Translations under genes and position numbers: made by a program
Shown: positions 10,575 through 22,952 of the stretch, piece after piece
How positions within the stretch are numbered: position 1 is the first letter of the stretch
How the letters are laid out: each line of letters starts with the position of its first letter
Assembly: GCF_000400465.1 (NCBI RefSeq)
Contig: NW_008806282.1
Location: 1-32,000, forward strand
Origin: Wallemia ichthyophaga EXF-994
Taxonomy: Eukaryota > Fungi > Basidiomycota
DNA: 32,000 bases
Direction of reading: 5' to 3'
Notes under the pieces: generated by a model
The model's database searches: none
What the model was told of the DNA's origin: nothing
What the model saw: only the letters and a program-made list of their open reading frames with translations

Positions 10575-10941
10575 CTAAACCTTATCGCCTAAACCTCTAT
10601 CCTTCAACTTCCTATGGAGTACTGATTCTATTGGGCAGCTATCAATCTTCTGTTGTGTTTTGTTGTAATGACGTCCACAGCAAATGTATAATTCGTCGAT
10701 TATCTGTCGGCGATGTAAGTTGTTAAGAGCATTGCCAATGACTCAGGCTCACGTTCTCGCACCTCGATTGCTGATAGTCATTCTTCATAAGGCAGCCTTG
10801 CAGCTTGCAAGCTTCGAGCTCGTCAGCGTTGGCGAGGACATGGAGGGAAGCGACGCACCAAGACGATGACAAGCGTCCGGTTTCTATAAAACAGGTTATT
10901 TTGTATTCTATTTGGCATAAATTTGTGCGTACATCGCCCAT
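10575..10941 (-). CDS. CMC4: Twin CX9C mitochondrial protein Cmc4 (MTCP1/p8 family), 73 aa, 4 exons
   Basis: Splicing three GT-AG introns gives MGD|KPDACHRLA|CKLQGCLMKNDYQQSRCEN|IIDELYICCGRHYNKTQQKIDSCPIESVLHRKLKDRGLGDKV*, with C8-x9-C18 and C29-x9-C39 plus the extra C13/C40/C54 typical of Cmc4. Confidence 0.9.
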
Positions 10942-15546: not shown

Positions 15547-18438
15547 ATGATGGATCCTTTCTCACTTGGTGTAAACCTGTCGCCGGTAAGTGTCCTGCTG
15601 CGCCTCCCGCGACTCCCCACTTAGTCACACAAAGGTCGTGCTTAAGACACTTGTACGGCATCTAATAAAGAAGCGCAATAACAATACAAACAAATCTGAA
15701 ACTCCCAGTACACCCAACGACGAGTACGCGTTTGATCAGGTTGGTTGTTATCCCGGTGGCTGCGTCTCAATCTAACACCCGCAGACATTCAAACTTACAA
15801 GAGCTTTTCTCGATATCGCGATGAATGTTGGTTGTTTATATTCCATGAACCCCGCTGATTTCAAATCCAGCACCCCGTCGAGGATCTTCAAAGCCTAGGA
15901 TCGACATATATCCCCCCGCCTTTCTGGGTTCATAACGTTGCTGTCACTGTCCCCATGTCCATTATAAACAACGCCGCTGAGTATCTCATCAAGGCTTTCG
16001 GCGGTGAGCAGCCGATGCGCGCCGCCGTTGGCGGTACTAGGTGGTGGCAGGTGAGACCAACTCCTGGATTACCTTCTGAATGGATTTGCAGTGAGTCCAT
16101 CTGTTGCTTATAGTACTCCTCTCACTCCACTCCACTCAGTGAAAAGCGATGTAAAGCTGGCTACCAGGAACAACAAACCAAATAAACCACGTGAACAACC
16201 TAAAGACTCCTTCACTCCTCAATTCTTCAAAGACATTGAAGGCCTCCCACGTACCATTCTCTTTGTTCACGGTGGTGCCTACTATTGGGGCTCCATTAAT
16301 ACCCACCGCTATCTAATTTGGCGCATGGCACGAAAAATGCGAGGTAAGGCATTTGCTGTCAGCTACAGACTTTCTCCTCAATACGGATTCCCTTGCGCAC
16401 TGCAAGACGTACTTAGCGCCTACCTATACCTTCTCTATCCACCAGAGGGTGCTCCACACAAAGCAGTAGATCCATCCAACCTTATTTTCGCAGGCGATAG
16501 TGCAGGAGGTGGTCTATTGCTCTCACTTTTACTAATTATTCGTGATCTCGGCCTGCCCTTACCCGCAGGCTCTATCCATATCTCGCCCTGGTGCGACCTC
16601 TCACATTCATTCCCATCAGTACTGAGCAACTATGAAACTGACGTCATACCAAAGTACGGTTTCGTACACAAACCATCCACTCTCTGGCCACCACCTAGCG
16701 AAGAGCTTCTTCAAAGAACACGCCAACATATCAAATCGTCAACACAAAGATCCAAATCTCCACTTCGGGGGGTGGGATCAGCTGCATCTCGCAAAGCAGA
16801 GGAAGGCAGGATAGAAGAAGATGCGATAAACGAGGCAGCGGGAATGACTAATGAACGCGGACACGAGAAGCTTGAGCCACCTCGCGATGTCCCTACTGTT
16901 GATCTAGATGGCAGGACGGTAGAGCTCAAAGGACAGATACAGATGTATGCAACCAATGAGCAAGTAGGACATCCATATGTTTCACCTGTGCTGGCACACT
17001 TGGGTGGTTTGTGTCCTTTATTCATCATGGCTAGTGACGGAGAGCTGCTGCGGGATGAGGGTATTTACATCGCTCACAAGGCTGCTCGTCCTGACGACTT
17101 TGAGTATAAAGAAGACGCAAAGAGACGTCTACCGAGCATGAACGGAATTGAGGGTAGATTTGGACCTACCAAGGTGCATTTGCAGGTGAGTGTTGGGTGT
17201 TTGGTGGTGGTATACTCAGACTTATAACTGACAACTCAACCAAAAATGAACAGGTTTACGACAAAATGTGTCACGATCTGCCCCTGTTTAGCATGGTCAC
17301 ACCTGCTAAATATGCTTATAGGGCTATGGCGGCATTCTGCTTCCAGGTGACGAAAGATACTACAGTTCAACCATCACCTGCATTACAAGGCTCAGATATT
17401 CCAAACACTATGTCTGATCTCGAGCTTGATAGTGCTGCTGAATCGCCCTCACCACTTAGGAAACTCGACAGCCCAGCTGAAGCACCATCACCTTCTACGA
17501 AACTCGACAGTCCTGCTGACGTACCTTCACCTTCTAGGAAGATCGACAATCCAGCTATAGCACTCTTGCCACCACCACCATCACCAGGTAAACCAAAGAG
17601 AAAGTTCTCCTTACTCGGACTGAAAAACAATGAAGGTGCAGGTGCTACATCAATTGACATGGAAAAAGCAGCAACAGTGAGCTCACAAACAGGTACGCCA
17701 GCAAGTGATGCAGAGAGACCAATAAAGTCAGGACCAGGAACAGCTGGGAACATGGCTGTTTACGATGAATCAATGGCATTCAAAGAGAGAAATATGATCA
17801 GAGAAAGAGTATCGCTCGTTGGACAAATCAGACCAATGGAATCATCTGAGAATATGGATATTCTACGCATGCCCGCTGATGAAGTGGGAGTATTTAAACC
17901 AGCCGCAGTTAAAAGATATTTAGAAGGAAAAAACAAATGGATGCATAAATTCAAACATACCGCCAAGAATGTCGAAAGGCAGCGCGAGAAAAGCCTGAAA
18001 GAATCGAATATACATGCAGAGAAGAAGATTAAAGATAGTGACAATATATTCGACACACCGCAAGTGACATGGCGGTGGCAGTGGGCGTTGGAGAATGAGA
18101 GACCACCACCTGCAAGTATTGTAGCAAGAAGAGATACGCAAGAAGCACGCAAACTGGTACAAATAGTAGATAACGCTGATAGTAAGCAAAATAGCAGAAC
18201 ATTAAGTCTATGGACGCTAGTAATGCACTTGATGAGTCCACAAAAGAGCAAAGCTAGCACGAATGACGACGGGGATGATGTCGCGCCTTGGACGAAAGAC
18301 ATTGAGAAACTCAAAAGAAAAGATGGCAAGAAAGATGAGGGACAGACAGTATCAGAGAGTGATTCGCCTGAAGAGGAGGAAATCAATATCGATAAACGGA
18401 AAGAGCAGTGGCTGAAAAATCACGTCAAAGATGAGTAG
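15547..18438 (+). CDS. Alpha/beta-hydrolase, hormone-sensitive-lipase (Abhydrolase_3) family esterase; multi-exon
   Basis: HGGAY oxyanion motif, GDSAGG nucleophile, SDGELLRDE acid region and MCHDL histidine region. The exact 5' exons are less certain. Confidence 0.85.
17425..17556 (+). repeat. Degenerate 39-nt coding tandem repeat, about 3.4 copies
   Basis: Encodes LDSAAESPSPLRK / LDSPAEAPSPSTK / LDSPADVPSPSRK / IDNPA; the DNA units share AAACTCGACAG. Confidence 0.85.
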
Positions 18439-21585: not shown

Positions 21586-22952
21586 TTAGTCTGCTTTGTT
21601 TTGAGTGTAATCCTATTCAATACCATCATCAGACACCGAGAAAACCAACTTAAAACAAACTAACCTCCATCTCAGCGTCCAAGTCTTCAGCTGATTTGGC
21701 AACTCTCTTCTCTTGCTTTGGCTGATCGCTGCGCTTTTTGGTTGGTTTCCTAGTGAAACCGTGTTAATTGATCTGCTCCAACGACTGCCGGTATAATTGG
21801 ATTTATTAAAGAATTGAACATTAATGACAACCCCAACGTATCCAAATATAACAGTGCAACAACGTGAAAGACGAAACTCACTTGATAGCCTTCTTGGTCT
21901 TTGGCTTAACAGTGGTGACTGCCTCAGCAGGCTTTGGAGCTAATCTTTGAATTAATCCGCTCTTATCTGATGATTCAACGACTATTTCAATCTTGATTGG
22001 TCTGTCTGTTGATTTTATATTGAAGAAAAAGCGCTCGTCAGTCATTTTGTTCTAAATCAATGCAAGCACACATTATTTAGATAGTGTGGGGTGTGTTTTT
22101 CCCAGCAATGCATTGTAGACTCTAGCTGACTAACTGAAGCTTGAATCCCTTTCAACTAAGCTACTCAAAGTGGGCGTGATTAGGGTCATTGGCGAAGTAT
22201 CAAATGGGTTTGTCTCAACTGCCTATCCAATTGAGCTGACTGTCAGCCAATACCTGTCGCGCGTGATACTGAAGATCAAGTCGGTTAGCTAGACATTTGC
22301 GAGCTGAGTGTGGGATGATTCCGTCACTATACGCGTCACTCTGAGTCGCGTCGCGTCGCTCCAACCAGTCTAAGCGTCAGCGAGTCTGCTCAGTATGAGC
22401 TTATGACGAGTAATGCTAGAAACATGCTCAGTCATTGCAAGTATCGTACATACTCACACAACTATCTAAATAATGTGTACTATGAAAAGGTAAGACTAAC
22501 TGTTGTCAATGACGCGACCATTAAACTCCTTAAAAGCCTTGTTGCCATCACCTTTTCTCTTAAATCTAACTTGACCAAAGCCCTTCGAGGTTCCTCTTTG
22601 GTCGTAGCTGATGCTGCACTCAGCTACTGGTCCCACAGTTTCAGTCATCAATTCCTAAAGCGGTGTGAGTAACAAATATAAGTTATTGAATCTTGCTCAC
22701 CTTAAGCGCGTGGTCATTAACGTCTGGTGGGAGGTTGGAGATGATGATCTTCTTAGCCTCCTCATTGAGTGCAGCACCATCCTTGGTCCTTGGAATGACA
22801 CGATCAGCAACAGGCTTAGCGCCTTGAGCCATACGCTTCGATTCACCCTGTTTAGCGCCGCTGAGACGCTTGCGCTGAGTGGTTTTGCGATGGCTTTTGC
22901 GTTCTTGACGCTTAGCCTTAATAACGTCTTCGAGTGGCTGGTCAATGTTCAT
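21586..22952 (-). CDS. YRA1: mRNA export adaptor Yra1/ALYREF (THO complex subunit 4); 5 exons
   Basis: N-terminal UBM MNIDQPLEDVIK; RRM KIIISNLPPDVNDHALK|ELM...RGTSKGFGQVRF...FNGRVIDN|RPIKIE; C-terminal UBM KSAEDLDAEME|DY. Introns 22700-22655, 22500-22006, 21881-21750, 21664-21613; TAA at 21588-21586. Confidence 0.9.
22068..22478. repeat. 18-bp perfect inverted repeat bracketing YRA1 intron 2
   Basis: ACACATTATTTAGATAGT (22068-22085) is the exact reverse complement of ACTATCTAAATAATGTGT (22461-22478). Confidence 0.95.

What the first reader, a model, noticed from the sequence alone, without database searches (positions are those of the whole stretch)
22006..22500. YRA1 homologue has a ten-fold oversized intron clamped by a long-range stem
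Seen: intron 2 is 495 nt. An 18-bp perfect inverted repeat, extendable to 21 bp with a G-U pair, starts about 19 nt after the 5' splice site and closes about 59 nt before the 3' splice site. This loops out about 375 nt and leaves an effective intron of roughly 80 nt. The best branch point (GACUGAC) is 32 nt from the AG, far beyond the local 9-14 nt norm. Established: S. cerevisiae YRA1 autoregulates through a long, poorly spliced intron with a non-consensus branch point and Edc3-dependent decay. Inference: a conserved or convergent structure-based autoregulatory intron in a distant fungus, where Yra1 binding or stem opening would switch splicing.
Basis: partly seen in the sequence, partly recalled or inferred. 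Interest (0 to 1): 0.78.

Follow-up and report, generated by a model that had tools for sequence, protein, structure and literature searches.

The report
Clamped giant intron in Wallemia YRA1
The mRNA-export-factor gene (ALY/Yra1/Mlo3) of the salt-loving fungus Wallemia ichthyophaga has one intron about eight times the usual length, held together by a 21-base-pair RNA stem that has not changed in four Wallemia lineages; it is most likely a structure-assisted version of the known self-regulating YRA1 intron.

Summary
The window is Wallemia ichthyophaga EXF-994. The minus-strand gene 22952-21586 encodes a 213-aa ALY/REF/Yra1/Mlo3 homologue. Its intron 2 (22500-22006) is 495 nt; the gene's other introns are 46, 132 and 52 nt.

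An 18-bp perfect stem, 21 bp with one G-U pair, joins intron positions 20-40 and 416-436. No shuffle reaches it, and it is the best inverted repeat in the 32 kb.

New findings:
- Both arms are invariant (42 of 42 nt) in four Wallemia lineages, whereas 34% of loop columns and 42% of third codon positions are invariant. There is strong conservation but no covariation.
- An oversized phase-1 intron sits at this exact codon in every other basidiomycete examined (155-915 nt). The same-position intron of Cryptococcus YRA1 is published as retained and NMD-sensitive.
- The long YRA1 intron of Saccharomyces and two filamentous ascomycetes lies elsewhere, at the position of Wallemia's short intron 1. 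The two long introns are therefore not orthologous.
- The stem is specific to Wallemia. It meets the yeast "zipper stem" geometry and reduces 5'ss-to-branch-point spacing to about 45 nt.

Most likely this is a regulatory retention/NMD intron whose splicing depends on the clamp. Control by Yra1 itself is untested. It is a new variant of a known kind.

The parts
21586..22952 (-). ALY/REF/Yra1/Mlo3 homologue, CDS span. Exons are 22952-22701, 22654-22501, 22005-21882, 21749-21665 and 21612-21586; 213 aa.
   Evidence: RRM E=1.6e-15. N-terminal LDxxLxDVI and C-terminal LDAEMEDY motifs are invariant in the family alignment. Exons 1-2 are 100% identical to the W. ichthyophaga 'mRNA export protein mlo3'.
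22006..22500 (-). Intron 2: 495 nt, phase 1, between IDN and NRPIKIE near the end of the RRM.
   Evidence: The same position and phase carry an oversized intron in all basidiomycete orthologues examined.
22495..22500 (-). 5' splice site GUUAGU, preceded by exon end ...ACA. If the intron is retained, the frame reads AGU UAG, with the stop at 22498-22496.
   Evidence: read-through translation ...IDNS*. It lies in an invariant 22-nt run, 22510-22489.
22461..22481 (-). 5' arm of the clamp, AGUACACAUUAUUUAGAUAGU (intron positions 20-40). It lies inside a 27-nt invariant run, 22482-22456.
22086..22460 (-). 375-nt looped-out segment. 34% of its columns are invariant and it has large indels between lineages.
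22325..22359 (-). Conserved GACGCG-rich block: GCGACGCGACGCGAC ... GUGACGCGUAUAGUG. It is the best alternative pairing partner of the 5' arm in all four lineages (-16 to -21 kcal/mol).
   Evidence: Its function is unknown.
22215..22228 (-). Invariant 14-mer GGAUAG|GCAGUUGA, a candidate internal 3' splice site followed by an in-frame UGA.
   Evidence: A branch-point-like pentamer lies 9-12 nt upstream in every lineage.
22186..22197 (-). Invariant 12-mer CUUCGCCAAUGA inside the candidate internal exon.
   Evidence: Its function is unknown.
22126..22136 (-). CA|GU(U/C)AGUCAG, a near copy of the real 5' splice site and the reverse complement of the branch-point motif. The candidate internal exon is 22222-22135.
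22065..22085 (-). 3' arm of the clamp, ACUAUCUAAAUAAUGUGUGCU (intron positions 416-436).
22037..22043 (-). Branch-point motif GACUGAC. UGACUGAC is invariant. The branch A is 32 nt from the 3' splice site and 26 nt after the stem.
22006..22015 (-). 3' splice site region AAAUCAACAG. It is invariant and part of a 23-nt invariant run, 22015-21993.

Best explanation
Intron 2 is the basidiomycete version of the dosage-controlling long intron of YRA1-family genes. It is a deliberately hard-to-splice intron, and failure to remove it gives a premature stop and decay of the transcript.

Retention puts UAG in frame two codons into the intron, with two further introns downstream, so the transcript is a classic NMD substrate.

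In Wallemia, whose splicing machinery normally handles introns of about 55-61 nt, removal depends on a 21-bp zipper stem. [quoted passage not shown] The balance between clamp formation and failure sets the fraction of productive mRNA.

Shown: the anatomy, the thermodynamic dominance of the stem, its invariance, the conservation of an oversized intron at this codon across Basidiomycota, and published retention plus NMD sensitivity of the same-position intron in Cryptococcus.

Inferred: that the stem promotes splicing, that retention occurs in Wallemia, and that the Yra1 protein itself is the regulator.
For: - Stem statistics and folding.
- Strand: the stem is stronger on the sense strand (-27.8 kcal/mol) than on the antisense strand (-23.1). 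The single non-Watson-Crick pair is G-U in the sense strand and A-C in the antisense strand.
- Conservation: the four longest invariant runs of the whole gene, exons included, are the 5' arm with flank (27 nt), the 3' splice site (23 nt), the 5' splice site (22 nt) and the 3' arm (20 nt). The arms are 42/42 invariant, against 34% of loop columns and 42% of third codon positions.
- Geometry: linkers of 19 + 26 nt meet the published zipper-stem definition of at least 10 nt, at least 20 nt and 42-85 nt in total (PMC12350175).
- Breadth: the same-position phase-1 intron measures 474, 794, 155, 915/1022 and 366 nt in five other basidiomycete lineages, whose other introns are 36-170 nt.
- Cryptococcus YRA1 intron 4 is 243 nt and its forward primer ends in ...HNRMIDN. 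Retention is 10.7 and 8.3% in wild type and 23.9 and 21.5% in upf1-delta.
- Long, inefficiently spliced YRA1 introns and autoregulation are established in Saccharomyces, and a long, inefficiently spliced, NMD-targeted YRA1 intron in Yarrowia (PMC2864733, PMC2911113).
Against: - No covariation: the arms never vary, so pairing itself is not proven. Invariance could reflect a sequence-specific constraint on each arm.
- No RNA-seq or structure probing for Wallemia was available, so retention, the branch point and stem formation in vivo are unverified.
- Other basidiomycetes keep the long intron without a significant clamp (z from -0.7 to +1.9). A predicted 21-bp helix in Cutaneotrichosporon is not kept in a sister species. 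The clamp is therefore not essential to the system.
- In the W. mellicola clade the total linker is 41 nt, 1 nt below the yeast-derived steric minimum. The stem could hinder rather than help there.
- Regulation by Yra1 itself rests only on analogy.
Confidence: 0.6

Rival explanations
1. The stem is a constitutive splicing aid only. It lets a long intron be spliced in a short-intron genome, the intron is removed efficiently, and it has no regulatory role. The length would then be tolerated baggage or would serve another purpose.
For: The geometry is exactly that of yeast zipper stems, which enhance splicing. The stem has pairing probability near 1.
Against: An oversized intron has been kept at this codon across Basidiomycota, and another is kept in Ascomycota YRA1 genes, which argues for a selected function of the length. 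The same-position Cryptococcus intron is retained and NMD-sensitive. The splice signals are weak and the stop codon is immediately in frame.
Confidence: 0.2
2. The clamp loops out a poison or decoy exon. The loop would contain a small unproductive exon (window 22222-22135). Pairing of the arms, which lie in the two flanking half-introns, forces skipping and productive mRNA. Failure of pairing leads to inclusion or stalled splicing, a stop codon and decay.
For: The invariant GGAUAG|GCAGUUGA has a branch-point-like pentamer 9-12 nt upstream in all four lineages, although that pentamer differs between them (CUCAA, CUAAC, CUCAC). The frame reads AGC AGU UGA. A near copy of the authentic 5' splice site lies 88-106 nt downstream. 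This reading would explain three of the four conserved loop blocks.
Against: There is no transcript evidence. Only one exon-skipping event was reported for the whole W. ichthyophaga transcriptome. Splice-site-like strings and stop codons are common in intronic sequence. No matching signals were established outside Wallemia.
Confidence: 0.2
3. The inverted repeat is the pair of terminal repeats of a miniature transposon that landed in the intron and has no function.
For: The layout is formally similar: 21-nt terminal inverted repeats around about 375 bp.
Against: There is no target-site duplication at the arm ends. There is no other copy of the arms or the interior in the 32-kb window or in about 30 kb of orthologous loci. 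The arms are invariant in four lineages while the interior diverges to 40% identity, the opposite of neutral decay. The mismatch is a G-U pair only on the gene's sense strand. The genome is 1.67% repeats.
Confidence: 0.03
4. The intron hosts a separate functional element: a non-coding RNA whose terminal stem is the clamp, or DNA-level regulatory sites such as CCAAT- and ACGCG-type motifs. Alternatively, the long duplex is a target for a double-strand-specific nuclease.
For: Invariant loop blocks exist (GGAUAGGCAGUUGA, CUUCGCCAAUGA, GACGCG repeats). Similar short motifs occur in the Cutaneotrichosporon intron, all on the sense strand.
Against: No Rfam family matches the intron in the window or in three orthologous loci, and no tRNA was found. 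C/D-box-like strings are not conserved between clades. The loop has large indels and no supported internal structure. The motif sharing with Cutaneotrichosporon is within chance expectation (about 0.2-0.8 matches expected).
Confidence: 0.07

Closest known systems
S. cerevisiae YRA1 autoregulatory intron (Preker & Guthrie; Dong et al., PMC2864733) and the long YRA1 introns of other hemiascomycetes (PMC2911113)
   Same: It is the same gene family. It has one exceptionally long intron inside the RRM-coding region, with weak or atypical splice signals. Its branch-point motif begins with G (GACUGAC here, GACUAAC in Saccharomyces). The unspliced transcript cannot make full-length protein.
   Different: The intron position and phase differ: yeast and filamentous ascomycetes have it at ...K/R|E(F/Y)F, phase 0, whereas Wallemia and other basidiomycetes have it at ID(N/G)|x(R/K)P, phase 1. 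No zipper stem was found in the three ascomycete introns. Decay is likely by NMD rather than Edc3.
Cryptococcus neoformans YRA1 (CNG03240) intron 4, retention regulated by NMD (PMC5006051)
   Same: The intron position is the same (after ...RMIDN). It is oversized (243 nt), and it has experimentally demonstrated retention that rises in upf1-delta.
   Different: It is shorter. Autoregulation was not tested there either.
Zipper stems of S. cerevisiae introns (RPS17B, RPL7A/B; PMC12350175; bioRxiv 10.1101/2025.03.14.643126)
   Same: It is a long-range helix starting at least 10 nt after the 5' splice site and ending at least 20 nt before the branch point. The total linker is about 45 nt. It shortens the effective 5' splice site to branch point distance.
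   Different: Yeast zipper stems are poorly conserved in sequence (20-30%), whereas this one is 100% invariant over deep divergence. It is also longer than the 6-bp minimum of that definition and occurs in a genome whose normal introns are about 60 nt. In RPL7B a competing structure mediates autoregulation. A comparable competitor here is only hinted at (block at 22359-22325).
Decoy or poison exons within retained introns of RNA-processing genes, and exon looping-out by complementary flanking introns (own knowledge: Parra et al. 2018; Howe & Ares 1997)
   Same: There are candidate internal 3' and 5' splice sites with an immediate in-frame stop, and the complementary arms lie in the two flanking half-introns.
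   Different: The resemblance is entirely computational here. Cassette exons are very rare in this fungus.

Membership tests
ALY/REF/Yra1/Mlo3 mRNA export adaptor proteins | A single central RRM. | tested here: met
   PF00076 covers residues 69-137, E=1.6e-15. The closest solved relatives by name are REF2 and ALYREF (THO complex subunit 4); one PABP chain has a better E-value.
ALY/REF/Yra1/Mlo3 mRNA export adaptor proteins | Short conserved N- and C-terminal UAP56/Sub2-binding motifs flanking RG- or basic-rich linkers. | tested here: met
   D4, L7 and L200, D201, E203, M204, Y207 are invariant in an alignment that includes S. cerevisiae Yra1. The C-terminal LDAEMEDY aligns with the Yra1 peptide crystallised with Sub2 (5SUP). 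There is a weak FoP_duplication hit.
ALY/REF/Yra1/Mlo3 mRNA export adaptor proteins | Orthology to proteins named mlo3, YRA1 or ALYREF. | tested here: met
   The best hits are 'mRNA export protein mlo3' of W. ichthyophaga (100% over exons 1-2) and mlo3/ALYREF of Agaricomycetes.
YRA1-type autoregulatory intron | An exceptionally long intron relative to the genome. | tested here: met
   The intron is 495 nt, against 46, 52 and 132 nt in the same gene and a genome mean of 61 nt.
YRA1-type autoregulatory intron | The same (orthologous) intron position as in Saccharomyces. | tested here: not met
   The S. uvarum intron lies between codons 95 and 96. This aligns with Wallemia intron 1, not intron 2. 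Two filamentous ascomycetes have their long intron at the yeast position.
YRA1-type autoregulatory intron | Suboptimal splice signals that cause inefficient splicing. | tested here: inconclusive
   The 5' splice site ACA|GUUAGU pairs with U1 at only 5 of 9 positions, assuming the canonical U1 5' end. The branch A is 32 nt from the AG, against about 11-14 nt in the sister introns. However, GUUAGU is a common 5' splice site in these fungi, and splicing efficiency was not measured.
YRA1-type autoregulatory intron | Intron retention with decay of the unspliced RNA. | not testable with these tools
   No Wallemia RNA-seq was available. The same-position intron in Cryptococcus is retained and NMD-sensitive.
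YRA1-type autoregulatory intron | Negative feedback by the Yra1 protein; Edc3 and Mex67 dependence. | not testable with these tools
   This needs over-expression and mutants. The literature suggests that Edc3 dependence is not conserved outside Saccharomyces.
Zipper stem (Rangan et al. 2025 definition) | [quoted passage not shown] | tested here: met
   19 nt and 26 nt in W. ichthyophaga and L002; 20 nt and 21 nt in the W. mellicola clade.
Zipper stem (Rangan et al. 2025 definition) | Total linker of 42-85 nt and at least 6 bp. | tested here: met
   45 nt and 21 bp in the window sequence. The W. mellicola clade has 41 nt, 1 nt under the limit.
Zipper stem (Rangan et al. 2025 definition) | Forms in vivo and enhances splicing. 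| not testable with these tools
   There is only a thermodynamic prediction (inner 18 pairs p=0.98-1.0 except the innermost, 0.69; outer three 0.64-0.86) and conservation.
Structured RNA supported by covariation | Compensatory base changes that preserve the pairs. | tested here: not met
   0 of 41 pairs show a change on both sides. There are only 4 one-sided wobble-compatible changes, 3 of them in the linker helix. With invariant arms the test has no power.
MITE / transposon relic | Target-site duplication and multiple genomic copies. | tested here: not met
   There is no duplication at the arm ends and no other copy in the window or in the orthologous loci. Whole-genome copy number was not testable.
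Intron-hosted snoRNA or other known RNA family | A match to a curated RNA family, or box motifs conserved between lineages. | tested here: not met
   Rfam gave no hit in the intron in the window or in three orthologous loci. A UGAUGA string occurs in one clade only.

The most novel reading that the evidence does not exclude
The clamp may be the gate of a three-way splicing switch. Pairing of the two invariant arms would loop out a conserved poison or decoy exon (22222-22135: 3' splice site plus in-frame UGA, and a duplicate 5' splice site) and give productive mRNA. An unpaired state, set for example by Yra1's own RNA-binding or annealing activity or by co-transcriptional capture of the 5' arm by the GACGCG block, would give inclusion or retention and decay.

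More broadly, the nine Dikarya ALY/Yra1 genes examined here (plus the published Y. lipolytica and C. neoformans genes) each keep exactly one giant regulatory intron, but its position moved between Ascomycota and Basidiomycota. That would mean the regulatory function moved from one intron to another.
Probability: 0.2. Interest if true: 0.75.

Novelty: new variant of a known kind. Interest (0 to 1): 0.52.

Why it matters
YRA1 autoregulation through a long, badly spliced intron is a textbook case, but it has been tied to budding yeasts. This finding adds two things.

- A long intron in this gene family occurs in both phyla of the Dikarya, yet it sits at different codons in Ascomycota and Basidiomycota. 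The property "one giant intron" appears to be selected, not a particular intron.
- Wallemia supplies a very clean natural example of a long-range RNA clamp: 21 bp, invariant, in a genome of about 60-nt introns. It is a simple system for testing how RNA structure makes long introns spliceable and whether that structure can be used as a regulatory switch.

There is also a practical point. The intron defeats gene callers: nearly all public Wallemia models of this essential gene are truncated or mis-spliced.

Tried and rejected
- Transposon origin: no target-site duplication and no other copies, while the arms are conserved and the interior decays.
- Known RNA families and tRNA: nothing in the intron, either in the window or in three orthologous loci. 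A SNORD57-like hit in exon 1 on the other strand (E=0.94) is noise.
- Covariation: RNAalifold and pair counting on five Wallemia sequences found no compensatory change in the clamp. The 'compensatory' pairs reported inside the loop lie in poorly aligned, indel-rich columns and were not trusted.
- 5' splice site to branch point helix: GUUAGUC pairs with GACUGAC over 7 bp in the isolated intron in all lineages. With the flanking exons included its probability is 0.02, so it was dropped as a mechanism.
- Clamp in other basidiomycetes: duplex energies are not better than shuffles. The 21-bp helix predicted in Cutaneotrichosporon sp. HIS471 has four uncompensated changes in C. cavernicola.
- Zipper stems in ascomycete YRA1 introns (S. 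uvarum, Jackrogersella, Sporormia): none in the MFE structures.
- Shared motifs with the Cutaneotrichosporon intron (CGCCAATG, GGATAGG, GCGACGTGAC): judged compatible with chance after counting the expected k-mer matches.
- Conserved GUUAGU as a special 5' splice site: it occurs in 4 of 15 other introns of the same genes, so this is weak evidence.
- More distant relatives: the metagenome scan gave one locus only. The profile search listed no Ustilaginomycotina or Pucciniomycotina among its top 120 hits. The supplements of the W. ichthyophaga transcriptome paper do not mention this gene. Preker & Guthrie 2006 is not held.
Full report
**Identity and gene model.** The region lies in a minus-strand gene. 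Splicing at GT-AG sites gives five exons: 22952-22701, 22654-22501, 22005-21882, 21749-21665 and 21612-21586. Together they form a 642-nt ORF of 213 aa.
- The protein has one RRM (PF00076, E=1.6e-15) and a weak FoP/C-terminal match.
- In an alignment with fungal relatives and S. cerevisiae Yra1, the N-terminal LDxSLDDII-type motif and the C-terminal LDAEMEDY motif are invariant. The latter matches the Yra1 peptide solved with Sub2.
- The database search identifies the source as Wallemia ichthyophaga EXF-994, 'mRNA export protein mlo3', 100% identical over exons 1-2.
- The deposited model (151 aa) leaves the true frame inside intron 2. The W. mellicola CBS 633.66 model (P0028, 212 aa) has exactly the exon structure derived here.

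**Checking the observation.**
- Intron 2 is 495 nt (22500-22006). Its neighbours are 46, 132 and 52 nt, and the published genome mean is 61 nt.
- The inverted repeat has arms at 22461-22481 and 22065-22085, with 375 nt between them.
- In the sense RNA the stem is 18 perfect pairs, then a U-G wobble, then two more pairs. It starts 19 nt after the 5' end of the intron and closes 59 nt before its 3' end.
- UGACUGAC lies at 22044-22037, with the branch A 32 nt from the AG.
- Chance is excluded. The longest perfect inverted repeat in 300 dinucleotide shuffles averages 8.3 and never exceeds 14. The arm sequence is expected 0.03 times in the window and occurs only at the two arms. This is the best inverted repeat within 1.5 kb anywhere in the 32 kb.
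- The stem is in the MFE structure of the intron (z=-3.3). With both flanking exons included, its inner 18 pairs (positions 23-40) have probability 0.98-1.0 except the innermost (0.69), and the three outer pairs 0.64-0.86.
- The duplex energy is -27.8 kcal/mol on the sense strand and -23.1 on the antisense strand, because the wobble becomes an A-C mismatch. This points to an RNA element of the gene's own transcript.

**Conservation within Wallemia.** Orthologous loci were recovered for W. mellicola (L001) and three unnamed Logan assemblies. L002 is a relative of W. ichthyophaga. L003-L005 are relatives of W. mellicola.
- All have the intron at the same place, 490-551 nt long, with identical arms.
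- Across four lineages, 34% of loop columns and 42% of third codon positions are invariant. Loop identity between the two clades is only 40-47%. The arms are 42/42 invariant (one apparent change is an alignment artefact).
- The four longest invariant runs of the whole gene, exons included, are:
  - the 5' arm with its flanks (27 nt);
  - the 3' splice site (23 nt);
  - the 5' splice site (22 nt);
  - the 3' arm (20 nt).
- Because nothing varies, there is no covariation: 0 of 41 pairs show a double change and 97% of cells are paired. Three wobble-compatible single changes occur in a short helix formed by the linkers, and a fourth at one pair of the stem extension.
- The structure is therefore supported by energy, strand asymmetry and extreme purifying selection, but not by compensatory evolution.

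**The long intron is older than the stem.** Exon-intron structures were mapped for orthologues from other basidiomycetes.
- The intron at the same codon (phase 1, between ID[N/G/A] and x[R/K]P[I/M]K[I/V]E) is the outlier in every case:

| Source | Same-position intron (nt) |
|---|---|
| Hypsizygus | 794 |
| Cutaneotrichosporon | 915 and 1022 |
| Tulasnella | 366 |
| Hydnum | 155 |
| Soil metagenome contig | 474 |

- The other introns of these genes are 36-170 nt.
- In five of six lineages the 5' splice site is GUUAGU. In phase 1 this places UAG in frame as the second intronic codon. GUUAGU is common in these fungi, though.
- Gonzalez-Hilarion et al. 2016 list C. neoformans YRA1 (CNG03240) intron 915185-915427 (243 nt) as retained in 10.7 and 8.3% of wild-type transcripts and in 23.9 and 21.5% in upf1-delta. 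Their 'i4' forward primer encodes HNRMIDN, the exon end that precedes this very intron. Retention coupled to NMD is therefore experimentally established for the position-homologous intron in another basidiomycete.

**Relation to the yeast intron.**
- The literature gives exon 1 of S. cerevisiae YRA1 as 285 nt.
- In genomic DNA of S. uvarum the 812-nt intron lies between codons 95 and 96, DAVR|EFFASQ, phase 0, with branch point GACUAAC.
- In the protein alignment this is the position of Wallemia's 46-nt intron 1, HALK|ELMTET.
- Two filamentous ascomycetes also have their long intron at the yeast position: 836 nt in Jackrogersella and 645 nt in Sporormia.
- Both phyla therefore keep one giant intron in this gene, but not the same one. 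The resemblance to yeast YRA1 is functional or convergent, not orthologous.
- Yarrowia's long YRA1 intron is NMD-targeted rather than Edc3-dependent, as in Cryptococcus. NMD is therefore the likelier decay route in Wallemia.

**What the stem does.** The clamp is specific to Wallemia.
- Duplex energies between the 5' part and the pre-branch-point part of the intron are 3.4-4.7 SD better than shuffles in the four Wallemia sequences. They are no better than shuffles in the other basidiomycetes.
- A predicted 21-bp helix in one Cutaneotrichosporon species is not kept in a sister species.
- The three ascomycete YRA1 introns have no zipper stem in their MFE structures.
[quoted passage not shown] The W. 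mellicola clade has 41 nt, just under the yeast-derived limit.
- With the stem formed, the 5' splice site to branch point spacing is close to the roughly 35 nt of the gene's own short introns.
- The best-supported reading is that the stem makes an otherwise unspliceable intron spliceable, and that the intron as a whole is a retention/NMD dosage valve. Whether Yra1 itself acts on it is inference by analogy.
[quoted passage not shown] It has probability 0.02 in the pre-mRNA context and was set aside.

**The loop.** Four conserved islands stand out in an otherwise fast-evolving loop.
- The first is a GACGCG-rich block (22359-22325). It is the best alternative partner of the 5' arm in all four lineages, at -16 to -21 kcal/mol.
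- The second is the invariant GGAUAGGCAGUUGA (22228-22215).
- The third is the invariant CUUCGCCAAUGA (22197-22186).
- The fourth is CAGU(U/C)AGUCAG (22136-22126).
- The second block reads as a 3' splice site (AUAG|G). A branch-point-like pentamer lies 9-12 nt upstream in every lineage, and the frame gives AGC AGU UGA.
- The fourth block is a near copy of the true 5' splice site, 88-106 nt downstream of the second.
- Together they look like a small poison or decoy exon, with the clamp arms in the flanking half-introns. That arrangement would favour skipping when the arms pair.
- This is a hypothesis only. There is no transcript evidence, and exon skipping is very rare in this fungus.
- Alternatives were checked and found wanting: snoRNA or another known RNA, tRNA, and DNA-level sites shared with Cutaneotrichosporon (within chance).

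**Transposon origin.** This is rejected as an explanation for the present state.
- There is no target-site duplication and no other copies were found.
- The conservation pattern is the reverse of decay.

**Verdict.** The feature is real and strongly selected. It is a new, structure-assisted variant of a known regulatory principle (the long YRA1 intron; zipper stems; retention plus NMD). It comes with an interesting evolutionary twist, namely the phylum-specific position of the long intron, and an untested possibility of a looped-out poison exon.

Noticed in passing
window 21586-22952 (minus strand); proteins P0001, P0021, P0002, P0024-P0027: Public gene models of this essential gene are mostly wrong because of intron 2. 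The EXF-994 model (151 aa) uses a CAG inside the intron and ends in ...NSLTLRLVGATRRDSE. The W. ichthyophaga population models (200 aa) skip RPIKIEIVVESSD. Most W. mellicola strain models stop at IDNS* (138-156 aa). Only the CBS 633.66 model (212 aa) is complete.
   Followed up: yes
loci L011 (1316-2151), L012 (1310-1954), L013 (786-1597), compared with window 22655-22700: Ascomycete ALY/Yra1 genes carry their giant intron (645-836 nt) at the K/R|E(F/Y)F codon boundary. Wallemia and other basidiomycetes have only a 46-67-nt intron there. The giant intron has a different position in each of the two phyla.
   Followed up: partly
window 22222-22135 with 22228-22215 and 22136-22126: Exon-like signals lie inside the looped-out segment: a conserved 3' splice site with an in-frame UGA, and a duplicate of the 5' splice site 88-106 nt downstream. 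This may be a poison or decoy exon.
   Followed up: partly
window 21750-21881 (intron 3): Intron 3 is 132 nt, also more than twice the genome mean. 50% of its columns are invariant across Wallemia lineages, against 28-30% for introns 1 and 4. Conserved strings include CUYAAUAAAUCCA and GAUCAAUURACA.
   Followed up: no
window 22494-22488 (intron +7 to +13): The invariant CUUACCU just after the 5' splice site is identical to the 5' end of canonical U1 snRNA (own knowledge), so it is complementary to a consensus 5' splice site. In W. ichthyophaga it can pair with GAAAAGGUGA in exon 2, but that exon sequence is not kept in W. mellicola.
   Followed up: partly
loci L009 (2152-3066) and L014: The Cutaneotrichosporon same-position intron shares CGCCAATG, GGATAGG and GCGACGTGAC with the Wallemia conserved blocks, all on the sense strand, and GGAUAG|GG UAA again gives an in-frame stop. 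The k-mer expectation says this could be chance. L014 also has a tandem expansion of about 106 nt relative to L009.
   Followed up: partly
locus L006 (589-1062), JGI contig Ga0247732_10079617: An unidentified soil fungus (53% identical in the RRM) has the same two intron positions, a 474-nt intron at the basidiomycete position, 5' splice site GUUAGU and branch point UGACUGAC, but no clamp.
   Followed up: partly
window 16037-16055 / 16680-16698 and 10797-10818: These are the two other inverted repeats found in the window: 19 nt at 84% with a 624-nt spacer, and a 17-nt palindrome. Both are weaker than the clamp and were not examined.
   Followed up: no
PMC5006051 Table S7: In Cryptococcus, SUB2 (CNA07200), the helicase partner of Yra1, also has an NMD-sensitive retained intron, in its 3' UTR (5.9-fold up in upf1-delta). 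Several TREX components may be controlled in this way.
   Followed up: no
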